DNA from: Ascidiella aspersa
Taxonomy: Eukaryota
Assembly: GCA_963924565.1 (NCBI GenBank)
Contig: OZ004614.1
Location: 18,290,001 to 18,354,000 of the forward strand
Length of the DNA: 64,000 bases
Direction of reading: 5' to 3'
Made by a program: the position numbers and the translations under genes. This document shows positions 682-52,599 of the stretch, piece after piece. Every line of letters begins with the position of its first letter. The first letter of the stretch is position 1. Under the pieces are notes generated by a model. It made no database searches. It was not told the DNA's origin and saw only the letters and a list, made by a program, of their open reading frames with translations.

Positions 682-2144
682 CAAACCCGATCGCTTTGCA
701 AAAGGCTGCATTTTGTGTGTTTTGCTAATCGTATTGTTGCTCTTTTCATTCCCACATTAGTCAACGAGCGATTGATTTACTGTAAGTTCGAAATAGGTGG
801 AATCGAGCCCAAACTGAGAAAAGTTGGGCCCGAAAGCTTTCAAGTGCTAAACTATTTTCTAACTAAAATTATATTTCAAAAAAAACAAAACAAAAAAACA
901 ATGACGTTCTGGCACTTGTTGAGAAATGTAGGTAGGGTAGGGTAGGATGGAGAGGCTAGCAGAAACAACGGGTCGGACCGGCGAAGGAGGCAGGCGGTCG
1001 GTCGGTGGAAAACGAAAAGAAACAGTTGGTGTTGTGCGGCCCCGAGACAGCCTTAGCTAGGCGGGCAGCACGTTACGTTAGTCAATTAGGAAAAAACAGA
1101 AAAGCTGATTTTGCAATTTGCCAACAGGCAGGCAGGCAAACACATTATTGAGAATGAGTTTTGTTTCTTTTCGGTGGTTCAGTTTCGGCAGTCTCAGTTA
1201 AGGGCTTGTTGCCTGGCTCGAACAGCAGCAAAAACTGTTCTAAAGGCGGTCCCTTGGCTGACTGCCTGTGCTTAGGCGACAAATCGCAGGGCTTTAATTT
1301 TTCGTGTACACGGTCTCGGTGTGACCCAGCCTCGAAAGCAATATCACCGGGTAGTCTTGGGAGGCCCAAATCGATCGCGCGTTGGCGTTTTGGCAACTGA
1401 ACACCTCGAAAAGGGCAGTCGTTCAGCTAAAGCCGAACGTTTCGAGCGTTGCTGACGACGGTGTGTCCTACTCAGCGACTTGATAGTCGACGGGTGCGCG
1501 CTACAGGACCTCAGGCGCTGGTAGACAAAATTTGAAGCGCCACCTCGGTCGGGCAGCCAGGCAAGCGAGCCTCTTGCTAAAATCAAAAGCACACCAAAGT
1601 GCAAGCAGTCGGCAGCAAACCTTTTCGGCATTTCACCGATTTCGCTTTGGTACGCAAACCACGTACAAATGGCCAGCGTGTGCTGTGTCGTCATAAATCC
1701 TTTATTGTTTCTTCGTTGTCGAAGAGAAGTTGATTGAATTAGCAAGCAAATTGCCATTTAGAAGGGATTGTCTATCCCTGGGATTGTCTATCCCTGCGCT
1801 TAAGCTTTGCTTGACAACCAGACAACTGAACATATTTATACTGTCAGACAGTCGCAAATTACATCTGCGACTTATTTTGCTGCTACCAAGTCGGGTAGTG
1901 GAAAGTTAGTTCTGCGTAAAGACGCAACTTGGATTACTCTCGCCATCTGCAACCAACTTGGAATTGGATTAGCGCGGCTGCGCCATCAACCCTGCAACCA
2001 GGTGTGAACTTTCTTATTTCCTGAGTAACATTGCTATATAAACTGCCCTACCGGCCAACTGACAAGCCGCCATTTTGTCAAACCTGGCACTTCGGGAAAT
2101 TTTTTGAAATTCTGCGGGAAATTTAGATTCCGTACCTCGCCGAA

Positions 2145-3428
2145 ATGGCCCCTACCACGAGTTGTCCTTTAACGGAAGCTGAACTCAAAAGCCTGATTAA
2201 TTTCGATCGTTCTACAGAGGTAGAAGCTCAGTTTACCCCAGCCCACTCTCGCCCCGCCATTTATGACCTTCTGGCTCACCTTCGCTTTAAGTTTACCAAC
2301 CTAGAGGGGCTGACACAACTTCCTAATGGTCGAGTGCAATTCGTTTGCACGACCAAAGAAAAAGCTGTAGAGCTAGCTAACCTCCTAAGACCCCATGCAC
2401 GCTATGCAGAAACATTTAATCCAGATACGATAAAAGTCCGTCTCAGCTACGTGCCAATAAGACTCTCTGACAAGGCCTTAGCCCGGATATTCTCCGCAAA
2501 ATTCGCGACGTGCCTCCGATCAAGAGAGATGCGCGACTCCTATGGTTATAAGAACGGCAAACGTGAACTAACAGTGGTCAATTCTGAAATTATGCAAAGC
2601 CCCCTTCCGAAAGAGGCATGGATAGGTCCATTCAAAATAGGAATCCACTACGATGGTCAACCCCCATTTTGCAAATACTGCAAAGCACAGGACCACGAGG
2701 TGGAGCATTGCACAAAATTAAAAGAGAAAAAGAAGCAAATTAAAGAAAAAGAAATACTAGATAAAAAAATAGCATCAAACATCCATCCTAACCATAACCA
2801 ATTCAATCAGGACCCAATATTTAGTGCCATATTAGAAAACATGGACATCTTCCCCAACCTGGCAGGACCCACAACCTCCAATATTTTCCTTGCGGGAACT
2901 AGACCCGAAAACCATACCAAAACTACCAGTACCCCCCAACCCGGAACCATCCCCCCACCTGCCCACACGATTGTCCAATCCCAACCAGCAGTGACCGACA
3001 AAGTTGAACCTCACCACGATGACAACATCAATCGCATCGTCCCGATTCACATGAATATCCCCTCAGACTTAGAGTCGGACGAACACGAAGATGAAGACGA
3101 CCTTGAAGAAGCCGACAACCACAACGAGAATGGAAATAAATGCGAGTCGAAAGACTTGCAGGAATTTCGAAAAGAAAAGCAACCAGAAGACCGCCCACCA
3201 CCTCCCCCCAAACCCACACCTTCTTACGCATACCCCGGACTCCCAAAACCATCCATTGTTGACCCTGCAAAAAGAGATAGATCGGGTGACTCAACTCCCG
3301 ACCGTAAACCCAAAAACCCCAAAACCCAAAACACCATCTATGAATGCCCCCAATGTTTTACGTCCTTTATTGATGACATACAAAATTGTGACTGCGTCAT
3401 ACCCACACTCCCAGATTCCACAATATAA
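2145..3428 (+). CDS. Family A ORF1p (427 aa), nucleic-acid chaperone with CCHC zinc knuckle
   Basis: CKYCKAQDHEVEHC knuckle, low-complexity tail, C-terminal CPQC..CDC; lies upstream of ORF2. Confidence 0.85.
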   Translation: MAPTTSCPLTEAELKSLINFDRSTEVEAQFTPAHSRPAIYDLLAHLRFKFTNLEGLTQLPNGRVQFVCTTKEKAVELANLLRPHARYAETFNPDTIKVRLSYVPIRLSDKALARIFSAKFATCLRSREMRDSYGYKNGKRELTVVNSEIMQSPLPKEAWIGPFKIGIHYDGQPPFCKYCKAQDHEVEHCTKLKEKKKQIKEKEILDKKIASNIHPNHNQFNQDPIFSAILENMDIFPNLAGPTTSNIFLAGTRPENHTKTTSTPQPGTIPPPAHTIVQSQPAVTDKVEPHHDDNINRIVPIHMNIPSDLESDEHEDEDDLEEADNHNENGNKCESKDLQEFRKEKQPEDRPPPPPKPTPSYAYPGLPKPSIVDPAKRDRSGDSTPDRKPKNPKTQNTIYECPQCFTSFIDDIQNCDCVIPTLPDSTI

Positions 3429-3556
3429 CCCCCTCCCCCCCCCGCCCATCCTTGTCGTTGATATATCCTTATTTATTGTTTGTGTAACTTAAATTTAGTA
3501 ACTGTAGCCTATAACTGTTGTTTTATTGTAATCATGCAACTACCGTAAAATGTAGA

Positions 3557-6500
3557 ATGCCCGCATACCTAAAAGTCATAACGCTAAACGTCGCGGGCAT
3601 ACACAACCCCCGTCGACGTTTAGCCATTTTCGAACTCCTAAAGTCCACTCGAGCAGATATAATCCTGCTTCAAGAGACCCACTCCACCCCACAGGACGAG
3701 GCCACCTGGGCCCACGAGTGGACCCCCGGCCCCGCCCTTTTTAACTCCGCCCCCTCCGGAGGCTCTGCCTCTAAGGGAGTAGCCATCTTGTTTAACTCCC
3801 CCACCTTCACCCCAACAAACGTCTTCTCTGACTTAACCGGCAGAACCTTATCATGTGACATCACCAACTTGGACCCAACTATCCACATAACTAACATATA
3901 CGCCCCATCCGGCAATAGAACCGCAAACACCAAATTCTTTGAAAATCTATACCCATACCTCACCTCCCCAAACCCGATAGTTTTTGCAGGAGACTTCAAT
4001 TCTGTTTTACAACCCCACTTGGACATTTACCCCCCAAAATCAGCCCGCCATATAAACAAATCTCTAGCCACACTCATCGCCACAATACAATTAATTGACC
4101 CCTATAGAACTGCAAACCCTGACACCCAAATTTTTACAAGAAGACAAACGAACACACAATCACGCATAGATCGATTCTACATCTCGTCAGATATCATAGC
4201 CACCAACTATTCAGTTACCCCTTTTTCCCTCTCCGATCATGACCAGGTCCTAATAACCATTAATATACCCATACGCCCCCCAACAGGCCACGGCCTTTGG
4301 AGAAATAACATCCAAACTCTGAAACACCAAGATTTCAAAACCAAACTTCAAGTTAAACTCCACTGGCTAACGACATTAAAACACGACTTTGACCCGCTCA
4401 GTTTCTGGACCCTAATAAAGGAAAGAGCTGCTACCCTCCATAAAATAGTACATAAAGAGAACAACATAACTAACTCCCGGGAAATAACCCAGAAACATTT
4501 GGACTTAGCCAAATTAAGGGAGGAAATGAATCCCAATAACTACCAGCAAACCCTTGTTAAGTTCCAGAATCTCAAGCGTGAATTAAACAAACATTATATA
4601 TCAAAAGCACGATACGATCTGTTAAAAGCAAAAGCAAACTTAATAGAAAACAAAAACCTCTCTACCAAAACCCTCTACAAACTAGTGCTACCTAAAAAAC
4701 ATTCCAGTCACATTAAAGAACTACTAGACGAAAATTCATTACCGTATGACACCCCCGTTGAACTATGCAACATCGCGAAAAAATTCTACGGAGAACTTTA
4801 TGCACCATCACCCCCCACATACCACCACCTAAACCACTTTACCGATAACCATATACCCATTCCAGACCAGTTAAACACGGCACTAACCCAACCCATTACC
4901 CTTATAGAAATCCGACAAGCAATTAAAGCCTTTCCATCTGGTAAGACCCCCGGGCCCGATGGGCTAACTATCGAGTTCTACAACGAGTGCTGGGATTTAA
5001 TCGGACCCAAGGCTGCCACTCTAAATTTCCATTTTTCCCTACCACACATGCCAGTTTTACCCTACGTTTTCCCTACGCTTTTGCGGGTAAATCTAGGGGC
5101 CCTACAACAACTCCATTGACGTAAGTGGGCTAAAAAACAAAATAGGGAGAGGAAATTTGCCCGGCAACCAGCTTCCGTACTTAAAATTTTTTTAAGTTAT
5201 TTTATTTAATTTTCCATTTTAGAAGAATGAGTCAGTCCCCAAAGTTTGAAATTTAAAGTTCAGTAAACGGCTAGTATAGTGCCTTCTTTCTGTAGGCCTA
5301 ATATTTTCACACCAAGTTCTATAATTTAATGTTATTTGGTAAATAACTCCATTGCACGTGTCTAAACCCCATAATTTTATTTTTTACGAAAATACCCTAC
5401 TTCCCCCTACAAAGTACGCTTTTCCCCGTAGGTATTCCCTACCCCCTACTTTAGGCGAAAATACCCTACCGTAGGGTAATATCCCTACGAGTGGCAGCCT
5501 TGATCGGACCCCACCTCCTCCCCGCCCTCAACCATGCATACTTCTCCCCCTCTCTCCCTCCTACTTTCGTAGAAGGCGCAATAATACTAATCCCCAAAAC
5601 CACAGATGCCAACACCCTCTCGAACTTCCGCCCCATCTCACTTTTAAATACAGACCTTAAAATTCTTAACAAAATTCTCAACACCCGCATCAAACCCCAT
5701 CTAAAACATTTTATTTCCCCCAACCAGCATGCCCAAACCAACAAAAATACCTCCACCGCCTCCAACCTCCTCCGCGACCTATATCATTTCTCATCCCAGA
5801 GCGACACCCACTCCTTCTTCATATCGCTCGACTTCAAAAAAGCCTTTGACTCCATAACCCATACCTGGCTCTCCCACTCCCTTATTTCCCGTAATTTCCC
5901 CCCGTGTTTTGTAAACTACCTGACCGCTACCCAAACCTCGGCTTCATCCCAAATTCTAATTAACGGTCACCCCTCCCAACCCGTGGCGATCAGGAGAGGA
6001 GTGAGACAAGGCGACCCGCTAAGTCTCACCCTCTTCCTGATCGCCCTCGACCCTCTCCTCCAAAGTATCCAAAACAACCCCTCCATTGCCCCCTCCCCTG
6101 CTCCCATCCGAAACCCCCCTAAATTTATAGCATATGCAGACGACGTCACCCTCACCCTTGCGCACCACCAATCCCTGCCTGCCTTATTTGACACCTTATC
6201 TAAATTTCACGACACCTCTGGCCTCTCCCTCAATCCCCTTAAAACCAAAGCCACTTACAACCGCTCCCTCCCCCCGCCCTTTCTAAATATCCCCACCATA
6301 AATTGGAACCCCCTAGCCATATTTCCCCTCAACATACCAATTGGCGACCCCACCCAAATTACCCAAGCATGGAACACAGCATACACCGAATTTGTAAACA
6401 AGACCTCACTAATCAAACACCCCTTTCTCACTTTTGACACTAAATCTATTCTATCCAAAACCCTGCTTCTCCCTCACTTCTCCCAACTAGCCCACGTCTA

Positions 6501-7488
6501 CTCCCCCCCGGACCGCATCAAAAACAAAATAAACAAGAAAATGTGCCAATTCATCACCGGTCCCCGCAACCCCACCATCCCATTGGACAAGCTCGCGGCC
6601 AGCCGCCCACACGGAGGCTACTCCATTGCCAACATTCCCCTCTATTCGGACCTTTTTCTTATAAGACAAGTAGGCGCATACTTGCGACACCGCTTAGCTG
6701 ACACCCCATCCGACACACAAACCCAAATAATCGAACACCAGCTAGGTATTCCATTGGCCCGAAAATACGAGCTCCGTTTCAAAAATACACTCCCCCATAC
6801 CATTTTCCCTTCCCCACACTATAAGCAAATCTGGAACATCATTTTAAAATATAACCCGACCCTAACCGAAATAATATCCCCCAAAATAAAACCCTTATAT
6901 CTCCGACTTACAACCCCACATCAGTACCTCCACCCCACCAACCAAAACCGAAATCCCCCCAACTGGCCACTCATACACCATCCCATGCTTCCCTCCTACC
7001 TTAAAACATTCAACTACAAACTGGCATCAAATGCAATCCCTGTCAAATGCCACACAGTCCCAAATATTCCGTCACTCCAACCAAACTGCCTCCTTTGCCA
7101 CACACGCTATGAGTCGGATGTCCATCTTTTTCATGAATGCCCACAAATACAACCCCTCCTAAATCATGTCAGATACATACACACCGCCTTCACATCCCAC
7201 CAAACAGATTTCTTCAATCACCACTCCCACATCACATTCACCACACCCCTTCAAACCCCCTTCCCAAACAACAACCTAATAACCCTTCTCAACACTGTCT
7301 TACACCATACTATATGGAAAACCAGAATTAAAAAAGCCATATTAGAAACCCCTGACCCAAACCCCACTCCGCCGCAAAAACTGATAACATCCTTCAATCA
7401 ATCAATACGTATGAAATATAGAATCGAACAAGCAAAAACTACTCCAACATATATTGATCTATTCGAAAAGTTAATCACTTTACTATAA
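3557..7488 (+). pseudogene. Family A ORF2p (APE endonuclease-RT-CCHC), interrupted only by a MITE
   Basis: TLNVAG, LQETH, GDFN, SRIDRFY, SDH endonuclease motifs; PGPDG, FRPISLLN, LDFKKAFDS, GVRQGDPLS, YADD; CLLC..HLFHEC. Joining 3557-5007 to 5511-7488 gives one 1142-aa frame. Confidence 0.93.
5008..5502. mobile_element. hAT-type MITE (495 bp)
   Basis: Perfect 14-bp TIR CAAGGCTGCCACTC / GAGTGGCAGCCTTG, 8-bp TSD ATCGGACC (5000-5007, 5503-5510), multiple subterminal CCCTAC repeats. Confidence 0.93.
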
Positions 7489-8063
7489 ACCAAGCTAGAT
7501 CACTCTCACCCCACACCCTCCACCCTAGTTCCCGCCCGACTCCCTTTCTGTCCATTATTGTTTTCATTTCTTAACTTCTAATCTACCAATACAGAGAAAC
7601 CAACGATTTCAGAGAGGTAAAAGTAACCATCGCCGCCATTTTGTTTTTAGAGACGCCATTTTGTTTTTCCGACGGCCATTTTGTTTTGTGATTAAGGCCC
7701 TTTTTAACTGAAATTGACAATTTCAAAGTGTGTCCCTACCCTCTGCAACCACAAAAGCATATCCTCGAAAGAGGGGAGCGAGAAATAAACCCAGAAATAT
7801 CTTTTTTCCTACTCGTTGTTGTTTTTCCTTTTCCTTTCGTGCCAACATGCATACTCCCCTTGTAGGAGGAGTAAAGGCCTCTTATTTGTTTTTATTTTAG
7901 TTTTGTCACTGCTTAACGGTTTACACATCCCCTGCAGTCATGACACCAGCGTGCTGCACCCAGTTTCCCCTGTTATTTTTCGCCATACTTTTCGCCGTCC
8001 GCTACCAAAATTACACACTGCTCGTTGTTCACATCCGAAACGAATATCAATAAATAACCAATA

Positions 8064-8139
8064 AGGGCAATGATGAGCCCAAACCAAAGGGGGGCCCTAG
8101 CAAATTGCTAGCCCCAAAAACCCTGAGGTCACTGAGCCC

Positions 8140-8140
<1 letters not shown>
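8064..8140 (+). ncRNA. Box C/D snoRNA-like (kink-turn) module at the 3' end of family A
   Basis: AGGGC-A-ATGATGA ... CTGA-GCCCT with internal hairpin CTAGC-AAATT-GCTAG; immediately precedes the poly(A). Confidence 0.7.
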
Positions 8141-8185
<45 letters not shown>

Positions 8186-12230: not shown

Positions 12231-15200
12231 CTATTGGGATAGCAAATTCCTGAGGTCTTGTATTGTTGACATGAATGTTGTGTCTAGCCTATTATGTTCA
12301 ACGTTAAGTCGTTGTGTAATTCCTCTTTTTATTGCAGATATAATTGCTGAAACTGGCCGAATTGGTTTATGTTCAAACTTGATTTTATTTCTGGTTCTCC
12401 AGATGTGGTGCCGGGTGAGTGTATTGATGTATACTAGGTGCTCTGTGTATATTTCAAGGTGGCTGGGTATGTTGAGTCGTGTGGTAATCTCATCGGTGAG
12501 CGTGGTGGCAGTGTTGGTGAGTCGGTTGATTAGCTGTTCAATGTATTTCCACACTGGCGCCAGTGTGGAACATGTTGAAAAAATGTGGTGCGTGGTTTCT
12601 GGCCTACTTCCGCAGAAGAGGCACAAGGTAGCCGGGTCGAGAGATATGGAAGAGAATTTGGTGGATACGGGTAAGAGGTCAAATAAAGTTCTATAATTAA
12701 ACGTTTTTGCCGCGTTAGAGAGGATTGGGTGGTGGACGTTATTCCAGAGGGTTGTCGGAGCCATGGGACCATCCCTCTGGCTAACGTCGGGGTTGGGGGA
12801 GACTAGGCCTAGATAGAGGGTACGGATTGAGCCATGAACGAGTTGGTCGAAGGAGAAGGAATATTTTTTAACCAGGTTTAAGGCGTGTTTGTAGAAGGGG
12901 TTGGGGATAACGGCGTGGGGGTGTGAGTTTCTTAGTCGTAACTTAAAAAGGTTTGAAAGTTGGAGTCCAATATTATACTCGATCATGGCCAATCCGGGTG
13001 TAGTTGGGGTATCGTTTTCTCTATGGCGGCAATAGAAGAAGATAGACTGCATAAAGAAAAGATCGCAGTAGACGGGAATGTTTGCTACCTTGTATCCCCC
13101 CCTATCGAACGGAAGGGCCAGTTGTTGTATTGGAAGGTGCAATCTACTGTTCCCAGTTATAAAATTACCGACCGCGTCATCTACCCGTTGCCGCAACGAC
13201 TCGGGGAGTGGATAAACCGTGGCTGTATAGGATATTAATGGCAGGAATTTAGCCTTCGTGACGATGGATTTGGCGTTCCACGTCATTGCGAACCGGGCAT
13301 GGCGTTTTATTGTGTCTGTGAGGGTTTTAAAATGTTCGGCCCAGTTCGCCGTGACGCTCGGCCCAGACCCGATCACGGTCCCGAGTAAACTCAGGTGCGA
13401 TCGAGTCCATCCGATGGGGGGGAGGGGGCCCTGAGCGCTTCGGGTGTAGAGGCCTTTGGTCTTGGAGTAGTTCAGAGTTAAACCCGAAGCGTCTCTGAAA
13501 CGATCTAATTTTTGGAACGCCAATGTCACGGAGTATGGGTGGCAAAGGGTCAGGGTTGTGTCATCGGCATAACTGGGACACTTGATGCAGTGTCGACCAG
13601 GTATGCCGATGCCGCTGACCGACGAGTCGGCCTGAAGGGCCAGTGAGAAGGGCGTTGCGGCAATCAGGAAAAGGAACAAGCTAAGGGGATCGCCTTGTCT
13701 TATTCCCCTTCCAATTGCAAATGGCGCGGTCGGGAACCCGTTAACAAGAACAGTAGATTGTGCGTCTGTGTTTATGCTGCGTATTACTCTGATAAAGTGT
13801 TCAGGAAAACCCATTTTAGTCATAACACAATAAAGCCATGCGTGGTCGACCGAGTCGAAGGCCTTCTTGAAGTCTAGGGAGATAAAGTAAGCATCCGTAC
13901 CCCTCCCCAGCGCGTCATAGTAGAGATCCCTAAGGAGGGTGGTGGCATCCGATATACGCCGTTTTGGCGCTGCGAATTGGTGGGGGTGGAGGACTCGCTC
14001 CAGGATCGCTTTTATCCGAGTGGCCAGGATTTTGGTGTAAATTTTTAGGTCGGTGTTGAGCAGGGAGATAGGGCGATAGTTTCCTAGGTCCGAGGGATCT
14101 TGTTTTTTGTGTAAAAGGGTGAGTGTGCCGAGTTTCATGTCCTCGGGGATTTGGCCTTGTTCGTGGATTCGGTTCATGACGTCAGTCAGATCCCGACCAA
14201 TCAGCTCCCAGTACAGAGAATAAAACTCTGTGCTGATGCCGTCCGGACCGGGGGACTTTCCCGACGCCATTTGCCGAATTGCGTTATGTACTTCCTGGCC
14301 CGTGATTGGTCGGGTCAGGGTGTCGTCTAAGGGGTCTAAGCTAGTAGGGACGTGCGCTAGAAAACTCCGCTGCGCCTCGGCGTCTGTGGGTTGAGTGCGG
14401 TACAAGTCCGTGTAAAAGCTGTGGGCGATGTTAAGCATCTCTACGTTGTTACTGGTTTTGTTTTGGCTTGTGCCTTGTTTAAGCTCGAGTATGGTTGTGT
14501 TCCTACGCTGTTCGGCAAACCGAGCAAAGAATGCCTTTGTGCCCCGGTCTCCCCAGTCAAAACCTTGGGCTCGGGATTTAAGAAGTCTGGCGCGGGCAGA
14601 TTGCCGCTGAAGGGTGCAAAGTTGACGTTTAAGGGTTAGGTAGGGGGTAAGTAGGGTTGGGTTGTTTGCCAGCGACCCCCAGAGTGCCGTGACGCCTTCC
14701 TGCAGTTGCACATGGTGTTTGTTTCGCTCTACGGCTTGCAATTTGGAGTGCTTTATGTTAAGGTCTTTTATGCGTTGTTTTATGTGCAGCCACCAGGAGG
14801 TTTTATCATCGAAAAGGGCGGGGTGGAGCGTGCTCCACATTTCCCACCGCTTTTCGAGTTCCTCCCGGAAAGCTGCGTTGGCGTAGGTGCTAGTATTGTT
14901 TTTCCAGTACCCCTTACCCTTGCGGGATCCGGGGACCGTCTCGATTTGTAAGGTTACCATGTCGTGGTCCGACTGGCAATTGGGCGTCCCATTTTCCGAA
15001 ATTGGTTTTATGAGTGCGCTGATATAGAAACGATCTAAGCGGGACTGTGTGTTGTTAAGTCTACGTGTATAGAATGGCCTATCGCCGTACAACTGCCGAA
15101 AGGAGTCTGACAACTGGAGATCGCGGCAAACGTCAATGAGACCTGCCAGGAGCTCGGGATAAGTAGAGGGGGGTAAACGATCAAGGCGCGAGTTCTCCAC

Positions 15201-15653
15201 CCCGTTAAAATCGCCCGCCAAAATGGTTGGGTGCCTCGAATGCACGTGCACGTACAGCGACCCGAAGAAAGCTCTGCGAGCAGCACTTCCTTCGGTTCGC
15301 TGCGGGGCATACACGTTTACGACGTGTATTGTTGAGCCGAAAAGCTGTATATCGACTGCCAGGACCCGCCCGTCTCCGTCGCCACTACGCGCGCCGAAGC
15401 TGAGTGATGGATGCCTAAGCAATATCGCGACCCCGTTCCTCGCGAGAGGCCTCGACAAGGCCGACCAAAACAGGGCTTTATTGGGTTGCCATTCAACACC
15501 CCACGCCATTTCCTCCGCAGGAGAACTGTGCGTCTCCTGCAGAAGAATGACGTGTGCGTCGCTTCCAGAAAGGGAATGAAAAATGGCCGATCGTTTGGCC
15601 GCATCTTTCATTCCCCCGACGTTGAATGTGGTTACTTTAAGGTAAGTAGCCAT
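12231..15653 (-). CDS. Family B ORF2p (1140 aa): APE endonuclease, reverse transcriptase, C-terminal CCHC
   Basis: TFNVGG, LQETH, GDFN, SRLDRFY, SDH; SPGPDG, YRPISLLN, LDFKKAFDSV, GIRQGDPLS, YADD; CLFC..HIFSTC; uninterrupted. Confidence 0.97.
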   Translation of the reverse strand: MATYLKVTTFNVGGMKDAAKRSAIFHSLSGSDAHVILLQETHSSPAEEMAWGVEWQPNKALFWSALSRPLARNGVAILLRHPSLSFGARSGDGDGRVLAVDIQLFGSTIHVVNVYAPQRTEGSAARRAFFGSLYVHVHSRHPTILAGDFNGVENSRLDRLPPSTYPELLAGLIDVCRDLQLSDSFRQLYGDRPFYTRRLNNTQSRLDRFYISALIKPISENGTPNCQSDHDMVTLQIETVPGSRKGKGYWKNNTSTYANAAFREELEKRWEMWSTLHPALFDDKTSWWLHIKQRIKDLNIKHSKLQAVERNKHHVQLQEGVTALWGSLANNPTLLTPYLTLKRQLCTLQRQSARARLLKSRAQGFDWGDRGTKAFFARFAEQRRNTTILELKQGTSQNKTSNNVEMLNIAHSFYTDLYRTQPTDAEAQRSFLAHVPTSLDPLDDTLTRPITGQEVHNAIRQMASGKSPGPDGISTEFYSLYWELIGRDLTDVMNRIHEQGQIPEDMKLGTLTLLHKKQDPSDLGNYRPISLLNTDLKIYTKILATRIKAILERVLHPHQFAAPKRRISDATTLLRDLYYDALGRGTDAYFISLDFKKAFDSVDHAWLYCVMTKMGFPEHFIRVIRSINTDAQSTVLVNGFPTAPFAIGRGIRQGDPLSLFLFLIAATPFSLALQADSSVSGIGIPGRHCIKCPSYADDTTLTLCHPYSVTLAFQKLDRFRDASGLTLNYSKTKGLYTRSAQGPLPPIGWTRSHLSLLGTVIGSGPSVTANWAEHFKTLTDTIKRHARFAMTWNAKSIVTKAKFLPLISYTATVYPLPESLRQRVDDAVGNFITGNSRLHLPIQQLALPFDRGGYKVANIPVYCDLFFMQSIFFYCRHRENDTPTTPGLAMIEYNIGLQLSNLFKLRLRNSHPHAVIPNPFYKHALNLVKKYSFSFDQLVHGSIRTLYLGLVSPNPDVSQRDGPMAPTTLWNNVHHPILSNAAKTFNYRTLFDLLPVSTKFSSISLDPATLCLFCGSRPETTHHIFSTCSTLAPVWKYIEQLINRLTNTATTLTDEITTRLNIPSHLEIYTEHLVYINTLTRHHIWRTRNKIKFEHKPIRPVSAIISAIKRGITQRLNVEHNRLDTTFMSTIQDLRNLLSQ

Positions 15654-15710
15654 GACTACTATTTAGTTTAGGTTCAGCTATCTATCCTAGGTACATCCTA
15701 AGTTGCGTCC

Positions 15711-17655: not shown

Positions 17656-17905
17656 TTGTTTCTCGAGTGAAATCGAAAGAATGAAGGCGGGCGGTTTGAA
17701 ACGCCTTTTATAATCCCCACGCCTGTCGAAAAACCGCCCGACGGTTGAAAAGCGCGCGCAGTAACACCCAATCGTTTTTTCCGCGCACTCTCGCACTGCT
17801 CCATTGGCGAAAGCGTCGAGCCGTCATTTGCATCTCTTCCGATCTATAAGCGACGAGAGTGGAAAAACACGCCACACTCTTCGTCGTCGAAAGCTACGAA
17901 GAACC
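17656..17905. promoter_or_regulatory. Second copy of the H2A/H2B divergent promoter, now flanked by retroelements on both sides
   Basis: Essentially identical to 1-242 from position 17664; octamer 17826-17833. Confidence 0.9.
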
Positions 17906-19282: not shown

Positions 19283-19293
19283 CTCCTGTCAAA

Positions 19294-20814: not shown

Positions 20815-21126
20815 AAGCCCTCCCTACTTCTCAGATGTTCGAAGATGCCACCTCCAGGTTCTTCAGTTTATGTGAAGACATCTTCGTTCATCCCTTTGGA
20901 TTCCTTTTTTTTCATTGTAAGTATACTTTGCATTGTTTGTTTATGTTTTTGTCTTTCGACAAGAACTCAACAACTTTGTATATATTCCCTTTATTCACTG
21001 TATATTTAACTTGTATTATTTGTTTCGTTTTTTTTCCTCGCAAAACTTTAATAAAACAACGGGCAATGATGCTCCCCTCCCCGGGTGGTGCAGCTGTCAC
21101 CAACACAAACCCGAGGCCCTGAGCCC

Positions 21127-21159
<33 letters not shown>
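19329..21159 (+). mobile_element. Family D copy 1: ORF1-only poly(A) element starting at H2B codon 12
   Basis: Begins after AAAAAGGCTGTCAA; ORF1, short 3'UTR, AATAAA, C/D-like module, poly(A) 21130-21159. Confidence 0.85.
21060..21127 (+). ncRNA. Box C/D-like module, family D copy 1
   Basis: CGGGC-A-ATGATGC ... CTGA-GCCCG; compensatory C-G pair replaces the A-T pair of family A. Confidence 0.65.
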
Positions 21160-22561: not shown

Positions 22562-24419
22562 TGAAGCAGACCCTCCTCTCCTCGAAGACCGTCCTGCAAC
22601 TGTCAGCTCTTTCCTCCAACCCCCTGCAACCCAGCCAGCTGAAGTTTTGGCCACTGATGTGCCCTCAACGTCGCAAGCTCGTCCGAAGATGCTTGCAAAC
22701 GTCGACCAAGACATCATTGATGCCTTGATGTTCGACCAATCCTCAGACGTGACTGCACGTTTTGTTCCAGCCCTCAGTCGGGCTATGATCTCGCTGCTGA
22801 TGCACGAGGTCTACCCGACTATGAGGGACTGGATCGACCACCTTGAAGCGATTGTACAAAAGCCGAACGGCTATGTTACTTTCACTTGCACGAAAAGAGA
22901 ATCTGCTGCCGCTCTGACAGCACTACTACGGGCGAGGCCCGAATGCAGTTTTGCCGAGCTATTTGATGAAGATCAAATAAAGGCAAAACTGTCATATGTA
23001 CCTCCGCGAATGCGAAACGACGCCATCAAGAGATGGTTTACTCTCAAATATGCCGAGTGCACAAGAGTCAGAATCCTTCGGGATACTGATAAATGTGCCA
23101 ATGGCAAGAGGGAACTGACGCTGAAAAGCTCAGAAATAGAGAATAATCCGATCCCGAAGTTTATAAAACTTGGGAAGGCCAAGGTAGCAGTTTTCTACCA
23201 AGGCCAGCCGGACTTTTGCAATTATTGCAAAGAGATGGGTCACGAAATACCCTCGTGCCCAAAACTGGCAAAAAAAAAGAGAAAAAAAGAGAATACGCCA
23301 AACAAAAGCATCTCGTCAGAGCAGAGCCACCGCCTCTGAACGACGAAAATTTTCCTCCTATGGAGGTACTACCAGGAGGCTCTCCACTGCTCGCTGGGAT
23401 CCCCCCCAGTGCCACTAGCACACCGAACGTGGTCAGAATATCGCCCAGCAAGAGCGAAAAACGAAGAAAAAGGAAAGAACGAAGAAAAGAAAAGAAGAGA
23501 CAACAAAGAGAGAAGCGAAAAGAAAAGAAGAAGGCAAAGAAAAGAAATGATACAACAACGGAGACATCCACTTCATCTACCCCCCTCCCAAACAACGACG
23601 CCGATCCCGGTGTCGAAATCAATTCCTCTCTCGAGGCCGAGCTCGAGGAAAATGCTTTCATGGCGTTCCATGCCTATGAGACACCCCTCAATGCCATTCC
23701 CATTGGAATTGATCCCGGTTCCGCGAGCGGTAATTCCTCCCATATATTCTCTTCGAGCGACCCATCGCCACAAGGGAAGAGAAATAGAGCTTCGACCTCA
23801 GAAGGGAGCTCAAAAACACCCGCCCACAAGCCGAAGCGTCGATTGGTCGATTATACCATAGACGAGATCTCGGCAATCAAGGCCCAAACAGTGACCGGTG
23901 GTAACTACACCGGGTACTTTTGCCGAGCATGCCGCAATTATTTCAACCCTCTCATGAAGGAGCAGTCAACTCAATGTGGCTGTCCTCTAACATCGAAACA
24001 GCTCTACAGCGAGCTGCAATGCGAGCTATACGCGCATGAGTCTACTTTTTAGAAGCCCTCCCTACTTCTCAGATGTTCGAAGATGCCACCTCCAGGTTCT
24101 TCAGTTTATGTGAAGACATCTTCGTTCATCCCTTTGGATTCCTTTTTTTTTTCATTGTAAGTATACTTTGCATTGTTTGTTTATGTTTTTGTCTTTCGAC
24201 AAGAACTCAACAACTTTGTATATATTCCCTTTATTCACTGTATATTTAACTTGTATTATTTGTTTCGTTTTTTTTTCTCGCAAAACTTTAATAAAACAAC
24301 GGGCAATGATGCTCCCCTCCCCGGGTGGTGCAGCTGTCACCAACACAAACCCGAGGCCCTGAGCCCGGTAAAAAAAAAAAAAAAAAAAAAAACAAAAAAA
24401 AAAAAAAAAAAAAAAAAAA
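22562..24419 (+). mobile_element. Family D copy 2 (H2B ATG at 22527; frameshift in A-run ~23280; C/D module 24300-24367)
   Basis: Near-identical to copy 1; ORF split into 22494-23339 and 23216-24052. Confidence 0.85.
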
Positions 24420-30100: not shown

Positions 30101-32162
30101 AAACTTCAGCTACCTCCAAAAATTTAATAAATGGCTTCCCCACTAACCCCGTGGCGATCAGAAGAGGTGTGAGGCAAGGCGACCCGCTGAGTCTCATCGC
30201 CCTCGACTCCTTCCTCTAAAACAGCCAGGACAACCCCTCCATTTCTCCCTCTCCCGCCCCTACCCGCACCCCACCCAAACTCGTCGCATACGCGGACGAT
30301 GTTACTACCCTCCTTGCCCACCCCCACTCCCTCCCCCTGCTATTCGACACCTTGGCCAAATTTACAACCGTATCCGGCTTGACCCTCAACCCCCTCAAAA
30401 CGAAGGTTACCTATACCAAATCCCTCCCCCTCCCCTCCATGATATACCTCAAATCGATTGGAACCCCCTATCCATATCCCCCTTAAATATACCCATAGGA
30501 GACCCCACCCAAATTACTCAAGCTTGGCAATCTTCATACACAAACTTTAAAAACAAGATCTCACAAATTACACATCCGTTTCTAACCTTTGACTCCAAAT
30601 CCATTCTCTCTAAGACCATCCTTCTCCCCAATTTTACTCAACTGGCATCCGTTTACCCAGCCCCAAACCTTATAAAAAATCCCATTCCCCTCGACACCCT
30701 GGCGGCCAGTCGCCCCCATCCCCCTCTACCTCGACCTCTTCCTTACCCGCATAATAGGCCCCTACCTCAACCAACGCACCCTTGATTCCCCCGCTGATAC
30801 CCAAAATCAAATTATAGAATACAACCTTGGAATTCCTCGATCAAAGAAATACGATTTTAGAATCAAAAATAATCTGCCACACACTATGTTTCCCTCACCA
30901 TATTATCAACAAATTTGGACTTTAATAACTCAATATAATCCGACATTGACCGAACTCACGTGCCCCAAAATAAAACCTCTACCTCCGCCTCACCATCCCC
31001 CAGCAATACTCTAATCCCAATCCCAGCTACAACCCCCCCAATTGGACCCAAGTTCACCACCCCCTCGCCCGCAACGCAATACCGGTAAAATCCCACACCA
31101 CCCCCAATATACTTTCCCTTGACCCCAACTGCCCCCTTTGCCACACAAAATATGAGTCCGATGCCCACCTATTCCACAACTGCATCCAAATCCAAGCCCT
31201 CCTCACCCATGTCAAAAACCTTTATTTTAATTTCACCTTCCAACCCACTACCTTTTTTGATTTTCATTCCCATATTTATTTTGTCATCCCGCCCCACTCC
31301 CCAACAACGACCTTATCACACTTTTAAATACAATCCTACACCACACCATATGGAAAACCCGCATTAGAAAAATCATATATCCCCAGACCCGCAACCCACC
31401 CCACCCCAAAGCCTAGTACTATTTTTTAATAACTCTATTCGATCCCGGTGCCAAATTGAACAGGCCAGACCCTTCTCTCCCCACATTGACCTGTTCGTTA
31501 AGCTAACTTCCCTCCTTTAATTACCAACTGACCCCTCCTGTCCCACCAAGCTAAATTGTCCAAACCCCATGTCAATCCAAAACCTCAGGGCCATCCTTTT
31601 ACCCCTTTATTTTTATATCTCTTGTTTTGGTTGTGTATATGATTGCCTTTTTCCTTTTATTTCTCTCCTTTTTAACACTCAGTTGTCTTGCTGAATCAGG
31701 AAACGTAGCCCTGAACCATTTGTACCCCTCAGGACGCCATTGTGTTTTTTCATCGCCATTTTGTTTCCCGCCATATATTTTTTTTATTATCGCCATTTTG
31801 ATTTTACAGTTCTGCAAATTATATACATAGAGCCTGTTTTAAAGCTTTTAAACCAAACCCCACCTAAATGTTAGGCTATCACAGCCTCCAAATTTTAGCC
31901 TCACTCTAAAAACAAAAGATCTCCCGCATGCATACACTCCTCCTCATAGGGGGAGTGAAGGGCAGGTCTCGTCTAACTCCCTACTGCAAAACAACCTGGT
32001 TCTGATTTTGCCAACTTTCCTCGTTTTTTTCTTTTTCTTGTTATGCAATATGTCCCAATAAAACAAACCACACAGGGCAATGATGAGCCCAAACCAAAGG
32101 GGGGGTTATTGCTAACCCCACCACCCCCTGATGTACCTGAGCCCTCGAGTAAAAAAAAAAAA
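27148..32162 (+). mobile_element. Family E: decayed two-ORF element at H2B codon 12, with TSD
   Basis: ORF1 remnants (~27450-28640), ORF2 remnants from 28685 (EN and RT motifs, YADD ~30290), C/D module 32074-32145, poly(A), then AAGGCTGTCAAG duplicating the 5' flank. Confidence 0.85.
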
Positions 32163-37800: not shown

Positions 37801-40557
37801 CCCTCACCCAACCCATCACCCGCCGCGAAATCAGAAACGTAATTAAGACCTTCCCGCCCGGTAAAACCCCCGGGCCCGACAGTCTCAGCATCGAGTTTTA
37901 CGCTGAATGCTGGGATCTCATCGGGCCTTTCCTCACCCTCACCCTCAACCATGCTTACCTCGCCCCAACCCTCCCCACCTATTTTACCCACGGAGCCATA
38001 ACCCTCATACCCAAAACCCCCGCTGCCAACACTCTCGCCAACTATCGTCCCTATTTCTCTTCTAAACACAGATCTCAAAATCCTTAACAAAATTTTAAAT
38101 CAACGTATTAAGTCTCATTTAAAACATTTCCTCTCTCCCCTTCAACACGCACAACCCGGAAAAAATACCTCCACAGCTTCCACCCTCATCCGCGACCTTC
38201 ACTACCATGCCACCCAGAGTAAAATACCCCCGCCTACTTCATATCCCTTGATTTCAAAAAAGCCTTTGATTCGATAACACGCCCCGATCTCTCACACATC
38301 CTCACCGCCCGCAACTTTCCCCCAGCCTTTCTAAATTACATATATAACACCCAGATTTTAGCCACATCCGCCATTTTATTAAATGGCTTCCCAACTGAAC
38401 CCGTGGCGATCAGAAGAGGTGTGAGACAAGGCGACCCGCTGAGTCTCACCCTCTTCCTGATCGCCCTCGACCCCCTTTTAAAGAACATACAAAACAACCC
38501 CTTCATCTCCCACCCCACCCGCAACCCGCCCAAACTCGTGGCATACGCCGACAATGTCACCCTCACCCTAGCCTACCCACATTCCCTACCCCCACTATTT
38601 GACACCCTGGCAAAATTTTAAGACATATCAGGTCTACACTCAACCCCCTCAAAACAAAAGCCACATATACCATAACCATACCCCCTCCCTACCACAACCT
38701 ACCCCAAATCGACTGGAATCCTTTATCAATTTCTCCCCTCAACATACCCATCGGACATCCCACCCAAATCACCCAAGCATGGCAAACCTCATACACTAAC
38801 TTCAAAAACAAGATCGCACAAATCACACATCCGTTTCTAACCTTTGACTCCAAATCCATTCTCTCTAAAACCATCCTCCTCCCCAATTTTACACAACTGG
38901 CTGCCGTTTATCCTCTACCAAACCCACTAAGAAATAAAATCAACCAAAAAACACTACAATATATTACCGGTCCCCGCAACCCCTCCATCCCTCTCGACAC
39001 CCTGGCGGCCAGTCGCCAACATACCCCTATATACCTGGACTTATACCTTATTTGTGTAATCGCCCCCTACCTCATTCACTGCACCCCTTCCGACACTCAA
39101 ACCCAAATTATTGAGTACAATCTAGGAATTCCCCTCTCAAAAAAATATGACTTTAGGCTTAAAAATACTGTCCCACATACCATATTCCCATCGCGATACT
39201 ATAAACAAATTTGGACCCTAATAAATAAATATAATCCCATTTTGAATGAAATCACATGTTCCAAAATAAAACCCCTTTACCTACGCCTTACTATACCCCA
39301 CAGATACTCCAACCAAACCCCAACTACAACCCCCCCCCCCAACTGGACCCAAATTCACCATCCCAACCACCTTCGGACCTTTAACTATAAATTAGCCCAC
39401 AATGCCATGCCCATCAAGTCCAATCAATACCCGCCAAAATATCCTTTCCCAACCCCAATTGTCCCCTCTGCCACAAAAGATATGAATCTGATGCACACCT
39501 ATTTCACCAATGCTCCCAAATTCAACCCCTTCTCACCCACGTTAAAAACTTCTATTTTAATTTCACCTCCCTCCCCACAACCTTTTTCGACTCCCATGCC
39601 CACATCTATTTTGTTACCCCACCCCACCCCCCACTCCCCCAAAATGCACCGTCCTTCATCACACAATATGGAAAACCTGATAAAAAAGTCATAAACCCAG
39701 ACCCGCAACCTACCCCACCCCAAAACCTAATATTGCGTTTTAATATGTCAATTCAATCCCCGTGCAAAATTGAACAGGCCAAACCCAACTCCCCCCCACA
39801 TTGTCCTGTTCGTTAAACTGACTTCCCTCCTTTAATACCAACTGACCCCTCCTCTCCTACCAAGCTAAATTGTCCCAGCCCCAGGTGAAACCAAAACCAT
39901 AGGTCTGCCCTAACCCCTTCTTTAAATTTTATGTTTACCTCTGTTTTACTTTTAGCCTTTTTTTTCCTTGTCTATCTTGTTATTCGGTTTCAATTATTTA
40001 TTCAAATTAGGAAAAAGTTACCCTACTGTCTTTGCTCGCCTGTTCCAATGAGACGCCATTTTGTTTTTCGGACCGCCATTTTTTTTTTTATTGATCCTTT
40101 GTCTGATATGAACAATATATTTTAAGGCGGCATCGCACTGGCATACCTTGTTTAGCCTGTCATGTCTTTCTTCGAGAGCTCTGTTAGCCCGAAAAAATTT
40201 TAAAATTTCAAAATGTACATCCTCAGACGAGGGGAGCTATGAAATACACAGAGCAACATGTCAAGTAACACGCAGACCTGCTGACGCATACTCCTCTTGG
40301 TAGGGGGAGTAAAAAGCAGGTCAACCATAAACTCTCCCTTTTTTTAAAATAACCCATCAAACTACATGTGCAAATAAATTTAAATTTTTACGCACCCATA
40401 TCCATTTATCGTTTCATATCCTCTTTACCGCTTATATCTTTTCAACCCGATTCCAAAATAAAAAACCGAAAAAGGGGCAATGATGAGCCCAAACCAAAGG
40501 GGTGGTTAGCAAATTGCCAACCCCACCACCCCTGAGGTACCTGAGCCCTCAAAAAAA
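34801..40557 (+). mobile_element. Family G: decayed full-length E-like element at H2B codon 12
   Basis: Follows CTGTCAAG; ORF1 remnants 35094-36470, ORF2 remnants from 36505; C/D module 40474-40549; A7 tail. Confidence 0.82.
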
Positions 40558-46000: not shown

Positions 46001-46233
46001 ATTTATTACTATTGAATATTTCAACTTACCGATGTTGTTAAGTATGTATCGTTACTTGATTACCGTATGTTTTTGTCTGATTACCCGTACGACGCTAGCG
46101 CCACACAAAATAAAACATTGCAAAGGGCAATGATGCTCCCCACCTCGGAGGCCGACAATTGGCGACAAATAATTGTCGACCCAAAACACCCGAGGGTCTC
46201 TGAGCCCTCAGTAAAAAAAAAAGTAGAAAAAAA
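43030..46233 (+). mobile_element. Family J: 3' part of a distinct element ending in the H1 5'UTR
   Basis: ORF2 remnants (NYRPISLLN, GVRQGD, YADD ~44526), C/D module 46124-46208, A-rich tail, then ATGGTCAAA-ATG of H1. 5' boundary approximate. Confidence 0.8.
45717..46010 (+). repeat. ~73-bp tandem repeat (x4) in the family J 3'UTR
   Basis: Repeated AACACC..CCAAGT(C/T)CATGCCCTCAAGATATGAGTGAA core. Confidence 0.85.
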
Positions 46234-46242
46234 ATGGTCAAA

Positions 46243-52219: not shown

Positions 52220-52253
<34 letters not shown>

Positions 52254-52599
52254 GTTTTCTTGTGCTGCGGACCACAAACAGAAAAGACGTCCGCAATTGG
52301 ATTTATTTCATCATTTCAATTTTTGGATATTACTTTAAATGCATATCCTCGAAAGAGGGGAGCGAAAGAAAAAGGCAAATCCTTTTTTTTAGAGGAGTGA
52401 AGACCAATTTCCTTTGTTACGTACCCCAACTAATTTTACGCCCATAGTGTCGCGTACCTTACCTTGCTCCCATCGCCCACTTGCTTTTTGTTGCCCGCAA
52501 AAATAAAACCACGCAGGGCAATGATGAGCCCAAACCAAAGGGGGGACCTAGCAAATTGCTAGTCCCAACAACCCTGAGCCCTCGCAAAGAAGAAAAAAA
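48361..52599 (+). mobile_element. Family H: decayed element starting at H2B codon 12, probably chimeric with an A-like 3' end
   Basis: ORF1 48607-49770 (CRYCKTPGHIIEAC), ORF2 remnants from 49818, T-run 52222-52252, C/D module 52515-52582. Confidence 0.78.

What the first reader, a model, noticed from the sequence alone, without database searches (positions are those of the whole stretch)
8064..8140. Box C/D snoRNA-like kink-turn module caps the 3' end of every poly(A)-class element (7 copies, covarying)
Seen at 8064-8140, 21060-21127, 24300-24367, 32074-32145, 40474-40549, 46124-46208 and 52515-52582. Pattern: (A/C/G)GGGC-A-ATGATG(A/C) ... CTGA-GCCC(T/G), ending a few nt before the tail. The terminal stem covaries (AGGGC/GCCCT vs CGGGC/GCCCG). 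The interior differs in sequence but keeps one topology: a G/C helix, an A/C-rich 3' bulge and an apical hairpin (CTAGC/GCTAG, TGGTG/CACCA, CGACAATT/AATTGTCG). Known: stem + RUGAUGA + CUGA is the box C/D motif bound by 15.5K/Snu13, which stabilises RNAs and routes them via Cajal bodies and nucleoli; Cajal bodies often adjoin histone locus bodies. Inference: the module may be the RT recognition signal, an end-protecting element or a zip-code delivering the RNP to histone loci.
Basis: partly seen in the sequence, partly recalled or inferred. Interest (0 to 1): 0.92.

Follow-up and report, generated by a model that had tools for sequence, protein, structure and literature searches.

The report
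LINE tails ending in snoRNA-like kink-turn
A whole clade of jumping genes (L1-like LINEs) in this sea-squirt genome ends, just before the poly(A) tail, in a small folded RNA module whose two conserved ends match the box C/D kink-turn of snoRNAs, which suggests these elements recruit the host's snoRNA-packaging proteins; I found no description of this for LINEs.

Summary
All seven + strand copies are at the stated coordinates. Each is GGGC-AAUGAUG...CUGA-GCCC, lies 4-11 nt after an AATAAA, and ends 1-6 nt before the A tail.

- **Extent:** the exact two-box pattern occurs 34 times in the genome against 0 for the reversed control. A covariance model finds at least 99 copies.
- **Carriers:** the carriers are one monophyletic clade of L1-like LINEs (endonuclease, reverse transcriptase and zinc finger; ORF1 with an RRM-like region and a CCHC knuckle) plus an ORF1-only derivative. 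The genome is an ascidian's. The reverse transcriptases (RTs) have diverged to 41-70% identity, yet the boxes and the 4-bp stem stay invariant while the interior is replaced.
- **Fit:** the ends match a box C/D kink-turn position by position. The interior is a closed hairpin with real covariation, no C' box and no rRNA guide. No Rfam family reaches threshold. It is therefore a kink-turn module, not a guide snoRNA.
- **Weak points:** terminal-stem covariation is thin, because only the outermost pair varies. The "zip-code to histone loci" idea is weakened: 51 of 60 loci have no histone gene nearby. RNA-seq was uninformative.
- **Best reading (inferred):** host SNU13 and possibly core snoRNP proteins bind, closing the stem. 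This bridges AAUAAA to the poly(A) site and caps the 3' end used for reverse transcription.

The scan found this module class before on other DNA of the same genome (s1-790851).

The parts
8049..8054 (+). AATAAA hexamer, 9 nt upstream of module 1
   Evidence: distances to the module measured
8064..8140 (+). Module 1 (family A, autonomous LINE 2145-8183). P1 is 8064-8068 with 8136-8140. The 3-nt bulge AAU is 8069-8071. The C box AUGAUGA is 8070-8076 and the D box CUGA is 8132-8135.
   Evidence: 97.6 bits
8083..8129 (+). Interior of module 1. P2a is 8083-8085 with 8127-8129. P2b is 8088-8091 with 8121-8124. P3 is 8092-8094 with 8113-8115. The apical hairpin is 8097-8102 with 8106-8111. The A-rich 3' bulge is 8116-8120.
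   Evidence: minimum-free-energy fold; pair counts
8143..8183 (+). A41 tail of family A, ending 12 nt before the H1 start codon at 8196
21060..21127 (+). Module 2 (class 2 interior, C box AUGAUGC), on an ORF1-only element. AATAAA is at 21050-21055 and the A30 tail at 21130-21159.
24300..24367 (+). Module 3, the tandem-repeat copy of module 2. AATAAA is at 24290-24295 and the tail at 24370-24419.
32074..32145 (+). Module 4 (class 1, short apical hairpin). AATAAA is at 32057-32062 and the A12 tail at 32151-32162.
40474..40549 (+). Module 5 (class 1). AATAAA is at 40457-40462 and the A7 tail at 40551-40557.
46124..46208 (+). Module 6 (class 2 interior with a long apical hairpin). AATAAA is at 46109-46114 and the A10 tail at 46213-46222. 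A second H1 gene starts at 46234.
52515..52582 (+). Module 7 (class 1). It has lost the stretch between the two CUGAG repeats, so the internal CUGA now serves as the D box. AATAAA is at 52502-52507 and the degenerate tail is about 52586-52599.

Best explanation
The 68-85 nt module is the last part of the 3' UTR RNA of one clade of L1-like LINEs, and of at least one ORF1-only derivative family, in an ascidian genome.

Its invariant ends form a box C/D-type kink-turn. The canonical stem is GGGC/GCCC. It is followed by a 3-nt bulge AAU, tandem sheared G.A and A.G pairs, a U.U pair and a G-C pair. The interior is a lineage-specific closed hairpin with no guide sequence.

Most likely the host kink-turn protein SNU13 (15.5K) binds it on the nascent RNA, perhaps followed by NOP58, NOP56 and fibrillarin. 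Two consequences would follow. First, the closed stem brings the AAUAAA, which lies 4-13 nt upstream, next to the cleavage site 1-6 nt downstream. The tail is then added right after the module rather than inside it. Second, the RNA gains a protein-capped 3' end directly beside the poly(A) tail on which target-primed reverse transcription starts. That cap would stabilise the template or mark it, and it would let elements with the same module be mobilised in trans.

A plausible origin is a template switch that fused a polyadenylated box C/D RNA onto the LINE's old poly(A) site.

Shown here: the motif, its position, its conservation, and its clade-wide inheritance. Inferred: protein binding, the bridging of AAUAAA to the cleavage site, the role in retrotransposition, and the origin.
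For: - **Motif fit:** both boxes, the 4-bp stem and the 3-nt bulge match the box C/D kink-turn consensus at every position. A rough estimate of my own puts such a fit for two random conserved blocks at about 1e-8.
- **Enrichment:** 7 copies in the window against 1.2 expected. The genome has 34 exact matches against 0 for the control and at least 99 covariance-model hits.
- **Position:** in most of the 100 aligned copies AATAAA lies 0-13 nt upstream and an A-rich tail starts 0-5 nt downstream.
- **Inheritance:** module-bearing RTs form one clade with 100/99 support. Family B, which has no module, falls in another clade.
- **Survey by RT homology rather than by module:** I matched at least 27 RT C-termini by coordinates to a module downstream. 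The three module-less copies I placed sit inside module-bearing families.
- **Selection:** RT C-termini are only 41-70% identical, yet the boxes and stem are invariant in intact lineages while the interior is replaced. Column deviation is 0.07-0.08 for the stem, 0.06 for the bulge, 0.09 for GAUGA, 0.15 for CUGA and 0.23 for the interior.
- **Structure:** 85.5% of cells are paired against 81.1% in shuffles (0 of 500 reach it). There are 57 double-change cells against 16.5, and slid controls reach only 24-57%. Forcing the terminal stem costs 0-4 kcal/mol.
- **Generic snoRNA signal:** 10 of 14 sub-threshold Rfam hits on module 1 are C/D-box snoRNA families.
- **No element-encoded binder seen:** ORF1 has an RRM-like region and a CCHC knuckle, read by eye, and gets no Pfam family. 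ORF2 matches only endonuclease, reverse-transcriptase and zinc-binding domains. No L7Ae-type domain appeared, so a host protein is the obvious binder.
- **Precedents:** the HTLV-1 Rex response element bridges a distant AAUAAA to its site (PMC3694450). The telomerase RNA of T. brucei carries a C/D box domain bound by NOP58, NOP56 and fibrillarin (PMC10061497).
Against: - No binding or expression evidence exists. RNA-seq run X4 laid only 7 reads on 7243-8142 and none on the module.
- The terminal stem shows almost no covariation. Its core never varies among active lineages, which points to sequence-specific recognition beyond what SNU13 needs. The fifth pair is unpaired in 20 of 78 cells.
- Single-sequence folding is not exceptional, with z-scores from +0.46 to -2.65.
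- In sublineages with AGCCC after the C box, a local hairpin GGGC/GCCC competes with the terminal stem.
- Class 2 has AUGAUGC, so it matches 6 of 7 C box positions, and it draws no sub-threshold snoRNA hits.
- There is no C'/D' pair, and full snoRNP assembly usually uses one.
- The covariance-model hit set is biased towards conserved boxes.
- No other species could be examined.
Confidence: 0.5

Rival explanations
1. The module is a 'stringent-type' LINE 3' tail. The element's own ORF2 or ORF1 protein reads it directly, and the box C/D likeness is secondary or a relic. No host snoRNP protein takes part.
For: The GGGC/GCCC stem and the AAU bulge are invariant in sequence, not merely in pairing, across lineages whose RTs are 41-70% identical. 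Autonomous and ORF1-only families share the module, as LINE/SINE partners share tails. ORF1 looks like an RNA binder (RRM-like region and CCHC knuckle, read by eye).
Against: A chance fit to every kink-turn position is very unlikely. No L7Ae-like or other known kink-turn-binding domain turned up in ORF1 or ORF2. Elements with long A tails usually need no specific 3' structure.
Confidence: 0.2
2. The LINE transcript acts as a host gene. The module is cut out and accumulates as an orphan 70-85 nt box C/D RNA with a function of its own.
For: The size, boxes and terminal stem are those of a C/D snoRNA. The tail starts 1-6 nt after the stem, which is where mature snoRNA ends lie. Two tail-less look-alikes exist, L018 and L097.
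Against: There is no C' box. rRNA complementarity does not exceed chance: the longest matches are 7-10 nt and are reached by 16-100% of shuffles. The stretch before the D box is locked into helix P2. The interior is replaced between lineages, so no conserved guide exists. No small RNA was seen, although the library could not have shown one.
Confidence: 0.12
3. The modules are passive chimeras. Host snoRNAs were retroposed onto LINE ends by chance, as in snoRTs or L1 chimeras, and have no function in the element.
For: snoRNA retroposons with A tails are known in mammals (PMC1687206). A host-like C/D RNA with the same GGGC/GCCC ends exists (L018).
Against: The module sits at the same place in every lineage of one clade and diverges along with them. 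The boxes stay invariant while the RT changes by half. Independent chimeras would not share the AATAAA spacing.
Confidence: 0.05

Closest known systems
Box C/D snoRNA terminal core motif (kink-turn bound by SNU13/15.5K, then NOP58, NOP56 and fibrillarin)
   Same: A 4-5 bp terminal stem, an RUGAUGA box and a CUGA box, a 3-nt bulge, the positions for G.A/A.G/U.U/G-C pairs, and a size of 68-85 nt.
   Different: It is part of an mRNA-like LINE transcript and is followed by poly(A). It has no C'/D' pair and no guide. Its interior is a closed hairpin. No Rfam family reaches gathering score.
C/D box domain of kinetoplastid telomerase RNA (T. brucei TR; PMC10061497, citing Gupta 2013)
   Same: A template RNA of a reverse transcriptase carries a snoRNA-type C/D domain that recruits core snoRNP proteins.
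   Different: That RNA is a non-coding cellular RNA with proven NOP58 binding. This one belongs to a mobile element, and binding is untested.
3' stem-loops of 'stringent' LINEs shared with their SINEs (eel UnaL2, silkworm SART1/R1; from my own knowledge)
   Same: A conserved structured 3' end is shared by autonomous elements and non-autonomous partners.
   Different: Those are simple hairpins read by the element's RT and often end in short repeats. This module is a host-type kink-turn placed before a long poly(A).
HTLV-1 Rex response element, which bridges AAUAAA and the poly(A) site (PMC3694450, citing Ahmed 1991)
   Same: A folded RNA inserted between the hexamer and the cleavage site, with the closing stem restoring the normal spacing.
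   Different: The Rex element spans about 250 nt and is retroviral. This module is 68-85 nt and has a kink-turn. Bridging here is inferred only.
ENE triple-helix elements at retrotransposon 3' ends (Arabidopsis Evade; PMC12501189)
   Same: An RNA element just upstream of a retrotransposon's poly(A) tail that protects the RNA and aids mobilisation.
   Different: An ENE needs U-rich internal loops that clamp the tail. This module is U-poor and has A/C-rich loops.
snoRNA retroposons (snoRTs, PMC1687206)
   Same: A snoRNA-like sequence followed by an A tail.
   Different: snoRTs are copies of host snoRNAs made by LINE machinery. Here the module is a heritable part of the LINE itself.

Membership tests
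Kink-turn (box C/D type) | Canonical stem ending in a C-G pair, then a 3-nt bulge on the 5' strand | tested here: met
   GGGC/GCCC followed by the bulge AAU in all 7 window copies and all 34 pattern hits
Kink-turn (box C/D type) | Tandem G.A and A.G positions, then U.U and a G-C pair | tested here: met
   GAUG lies opposite CUGA in the correct register. Column deviation is 0.04-0.19. The G-C pair reads GC 62, GU 8, AU 2. The geometry itself cannot be tested with these tools.
Kink-turn (box C/D type) | Binding by an L7Ae-family protein (SNU13/15.5K) | not testable with these tools
   No RNA-protein tool was available
Box C/D guide snoRNA | C box RUGAUGA near the 5' end, D box CUGA near the 3' end, and a terminal stem | tested here: met
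   Class 1 has AUGAUGA. Class 2 has AUGAUGC, matching 6 of 7 positions.
Box C/D guide snoRNA | Internal D' and C' boxes | tested here: not met
   No C' box. Class 1 alone has an internal CUGA, and it lies on the 3' side just before the D box.
Box C/D guide snoRNA | An antisense guide of 10 nt or more to rRNA, placed upstream of D or D' | tested here: not met
   The longest complement to this genome's own 18S or 28S is 7-10 nt and is reached by 16-100% of shuffles. The region is paired within helix P2.
Box C/D guide snoRNA | Match to a curated family | tested here: not met
   No gathering-score hit. The best sub-threshold scores are 15-18 bits against cut-offs of 39-50.
Box C/D guide snoRNA | Accumulates as a discrete small RNA | tested here: inconclusive
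   Seven reads in all and none on the module. The library does not capture small RNAs.
Stringent-type LINE 3' recognition tail | A conserved 3' structure shared by an autonomous LINE and a non-autonomous partner | tested here: met
   The ORF1-only element at 17804-21159 and the autonomous families carry the module
Stringent-type LINE 3' recognition tail | Required for recognition by the element's RT | not testable with these tools
   Needs a retrotransposition or binding assay
SECIS element | AUGA / AA / GA core with internal loops on both strands, and a match to a curated model | tested here: not met
   No SECIS model among the hits at E up to 10. The 3' GA abuts the terminal stem directly.
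ENE (poly(A)-clamping triple helix) | A U-rich internal loop flanked by G-C stems | tested here: not met
   No U-rich loop. The loops are A/C-rich.
snoRNA retroposon (snoRT) | An independent retrocopy of a host snoRNA, not inherited within a LINE | tested here: not met
   The module is clade-wide and co-diverges with the RT

The most novel reading that the evidence does not exclude
A LINE clade has made the host box C/D snoRNP assembly pathway (SNU13, then NOP58, NOP56 and fibrillarin) part of its own retrotransposition particle. It would use that pathway to define and cap the RNA 3' end next to the poly(A) primer site. This would be a transposon counterpart of the snoRNP domains of telomerase RNAs, and the first snoRNP-dependent LINE.
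Probability: 0.35. Interest if true: 0.8.

Novelty: new variant of a known kind. Interest (0 to 1): 0.62.

Why it matters
Structured 3' ends of LINEs are known as signals read by the element's own reverse transcriptase. Some cellular RT templates, the telomerase RNAs, borrow snoRNP proteins. A LINE whose conserved 3' end is a host-type kink-turn would link these two ideas. It would show a mobile element exploiting the snoRNP assembly pathway for 3' end formation, stability or nuclear routing.

It would also offer a small natural test case for how a folded RNA placed between AAUAAA and the cleavage site sets the poly(A) site. The claim can be tested directly with a gel shift and 3' end mapping.

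Tried and rejected
- **Rfam:** no family reached gathering score on the modules. Permissive scans gave only generic C/D-box hits for class 1 and nothing relevant for class 2. No SECIS model appeared.
- **Guide function:** no complementarity to this genome's 18S or 28S beyond chance. The 14-nt complement of L018's putative guide is not in rDNA.
- **Other species:** I therefore could not read the 3' ends of the Phallusia, Clavelina and unnamed ENA relatives (P0001-P0010).
- **Metagenome scan:** the pattern scan returned two chance matches inside GC-rich bacterial coding sequence.
- **RNA-seq:** one transcriptome run of the same species label laid 7 reads and none on the module. This says nothing either way.
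- **Zip-code to histone loci:** not supported, since 9 of 60 loci have a histone gene nearby.
- **Hammerhead ribozyme:** considered by eye and rejected. The box reads AUGAUGA, not CUGAUGA, and there is no conserved GAAA.
- **ENE:** considered by eye and rejected, because there are no U-rich loops.
- **Element-encoded kink-turn binder:** no L7Ae-like domain turned up. ORF1 has an RRM-like region and a CCHC knuckle, and ORF2 has endonuclease, reverse-transcriptase and zinc-binding domains.
- **Literature:** searches found no description of a kink-turn or box C/D module as a LINE 3' end. The word search for 'snoRTE' returned only unrelated papers.

Full report
**Observation.**
Each reads N-GGGC-A-AUGAUG(A/C)...CUGA-GCCC-N.
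- The word GGGCAATGATG, with up to one mismatch, occurs exactly seven times in the window and only on the + strand. About 1.2 occurrences are expected, and no shuffle reached seven.
- Each copy has an AATAAA 4-11 nt upstream and an A tract, or a decayed A-rich tail, 1-6 nt downstream.
- Every + strand A tract of 12 or more in the window is preceded by the module.

**Extent in the genome.**
- The window is chromosome-scale contig 8, 18.29-18.35 Mb, of a 308-Mb assembly.
- The two-box pattern with a 40-70 nt gap has 34 matches in the genome and none for the reversed control.
- I built a covariance model from 21 distinct copies. It found 99 matches among the 150 candidates scored, so 99 is a lower bound.
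- Aligned together, the matches make 85 distinct sequences.
- In most of them an AATAAA lies 0-13 nt upstream and an A-rich tail starts 0-5 nt downstream.

**What carries it.**
- Element 1 of the window (2145-8183) has three parts: an ORF1, an apurinic-type endonuclease, and a reverse transcriptase with the zf-RVT zinc finger. That is an L1-like LINE.
- It ends 12 nt before a histone H1 start codon. The window is an animal histone cluster with canonical histone 3' stem-loops.
- By my own reading of the translation, ORF1 has an RRM-like region and a CCHC knuckle. Pfam assigns it no family.
- The best outside relatives of the RT are ascidian: Phallusia mammillata at 47% identity and Clavelina lepadiformis at 31-34%.
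- The element carrying modules 2 and 3 has an ORF1 homologue (43-44% identity) and no RT domain.
- Module-bearing copies elsewhere in the genome sit downstream of RT C-termini that are 41-70% identical to family A.
- In a maximum-likelihood tree of the RT C-terminal region, all module-bearing lineages form one clade with 100/99 support. The Phallusia protein is sister to that clade. The tail-less family B of the window (12231-17081, minus strand, no module) falls in a different clade.

**A survey by RT homology instead of by module**.
- Matching coordinates by hand against the module hits, at least 27 RT C-termini have the module downstream.
- Sixteen other regions were scanned without speed filters. 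They gave no complete module and one truncated copy.
- The three module-less copies I could place belong to module-bearing families, at 55%, 96% and 87-90% identity to them.
- So at the level of lineages the module is universal in this clade. Individual decayed copies can lack it.

**Fit to a kink-turn.** Read as RNA, the ends give the following.
- A canonical stem GGGC/GCCC that closes with a C-G pair.
- A three-base bulge A-A-U.
- G.A and A.G positions, then U.U and a G-C pair.

This is the arrangement of the box C/D core motif: RUGAUGA and CUGA flanked by a terminal stem (established knowledge). Every position fits. In class 2 the seventh C-box base is C instead of A. By a rough estimate of my own, two random conserved blocks would fit this well about once in 1e8.

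**Conservation** (74 full-length distinct copies).

| Part | Deviation from consensus |
|---|---|
| Stem | 0.07-0.08 |
| Bulge AAU | 0.06 |
| GAUGA | 0.09 |
| CUGA | 0.15 |
| Interior | 0.23 |

The model search favours conserved boxes, so these numbers lean towards the result. The stronger argument is that intact lineages with half-diverged RTs keep the boxes and stem unchanged while replacing the interior.

**Structure.**
- On the 85 distinct sequences, 85.5% of cells are paired against 81.1% in shuffles, and none of 500 shuffles reaches the observed value. There are 57 double-change cells against 16.5 expected. Structures with the 3' partner slid by 1-3 columns pair only 24-57% of cells. The smaller set gave the same picture.
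- The alignment was fitted to the model, so these counts lean towards the structure.
- Covariation is concentrated in the apical hairpin. One pair reads U-A 46, C-G 10, U-G 8, G-C 3. The two G/C helices also covary.
- Class 2 has Watson-Crick pairs (CCUC/GAGG) where class 1 has A.A and A.G mismatches. This supports a common architecture of outer helix, A/C-rich 3' bulge and apical hairpin.
- The terminal stem shows little covariation. Its four core pairs are invariant in intact lineages, and the fifth pair is often unpaired.
- Thermodynamic folding of single copies is unremarkable, with z-scores from +0.46 to -2.65. Forcing the terminal stem costs 0-4 kcal/mol. A competing local hairpin GGGC/GCCC exists only in sublineages with AGCCC after the C box.

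**It is not a guide snoRNA.**
- No Rfam family reaches its gathering score.
- On module 1, 10 of 14 sub-threshold hits are C/D-box snoRNA families that match through the generic ends. Class 2 draws none.
- There is no C' box.
- The bases before the D box are paired within helix P2.
- Complementarity to the genome's own 18S and 28S rRNA is no better than that of shuffled interiors.
- SECIS and ENE readings fail on their defining features.

**Mechanism (inferred).**
- The AAUAAA lies where a hexamer would sit for a cleavage site at the module's 5' edge, yet tails begin just after the 3' edge. The closing stem would bring the two together, as the Rex response element does in HTLV-1 (PMC3694450).
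- A kink-turn protein would stabilise that closure and leave a protein cap next to the poly(A) tail, on which L1-type reverse transcription starts.
- The hexamer-to-module distance also suggests an origin: a polyadenylated C/D RNA fused onto the old poly(A) site by template switching.
- The invariance of the stem sequence hints at a further sequence-specific reader, possibly an element protein.
- The telomerase RNA of T. brucei is a precedent for an RT template with a C/D domain bound by NOP58, NOP56 and fibrillarin (PMC10061497).

**The histone zip-code idea.** Only 9 of 60 module-bearing 3-kb loci have a histone gene beside them, and all 9 are in the contig-8 cluster. The module predates the split of the lineages. 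It is a property of the clade, not of histone targeting.

**Limits.**
- RNA-seq laid 7 reads on the 900-nt stretch and none on the module.
- The metagenome scan gave only chance hits.
- Literature searches found snoRNA retroposons and L1 chimeras, but no LINE with a kink-turn 3' module.
- An earlier follow-up of this scan reached the same reading on other DNA of this genome (s1-790851).

Noticed in passing
L018:1500-1560 (- strand; G000 C7:31068874-31068932): A 61-nt sequence with the same GGGC-AAUGAUGA...CUGA-GCCC ends and an internal CUGA. It has no AATAAA, no A tail and no interior likeness to the module. It draws sub-threshold hits to SNORD20, SNORD50 and SNORD58. It may be a host orphan C/D RNA or the kind of RNA the module came from. 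No rRNA complement was found.
   Followed up: partly
L097:101-178 (G000 C9:17304030-17304107): A tail-less module-like copy whose terminal stem is UGGC/GCCA, a change on both sides relative to GGGC/GCCC. Its 3' half is clearly of class 1. It could be a domesticated or simply a decayed copy.
   Followed up: no
window 52515-52582; L073; L010: Copies that have lost the stretch between the two CUGAG repeats, so the internal CUGA becomes the D box. L010 belongs to a different family, so the loss seems to have happened more than once.
   Followed up: partly
L116 (G000 C4:26722300-26724300, - strand): A decayed member of a module-bearing family (87-90% identical to the L003/L058 RT). It ends right at the AATAAA with an 8-A run and has no module. 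Possibly a copy of a transcript polyadenylated at the hexamer, or a deletion.
   Followed up: partly
L004, L008, L011, L012 (G000 C3:22756, C3:39282194, C5:17244, C5:86458): Class 2b autonomous copies lie within about 20-170 kb of contig ends. Three of them share the same downstream flank, which hints at a subterminal or repeated target.
   Followed up: no
L046-L054 (G000 C2:35.83-36.59 Mb): Seven near-identical copies with a G.U in the terminal stem and near-identical flanks. They look like a segmental or tandem duplication rather than separate insertions.
   Followed up: no
window 52222-52252: A run of 31 T on the + strand (A31 on the minus strand) with no module before it on the minus strand. 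It lies inside the C-rich 3' part of a + strand element.
   Followed up: no
window 2001-8000, 28001-32000, 36001-40000, 50001-52000: The 3' halves of the + strand elements have a strong negative GC skew (-0.3 to -0.6), meaning C-rich, G-poor sense strands.
   Followed up: no
G000 C5:8.8-14.5 Mb: Full-length 18S and 28S genes are scattered over about 5.7 Mb of contig 5. The 18S copies lie in both orientations rather than in one head-to-tail array.
   Followed up: no
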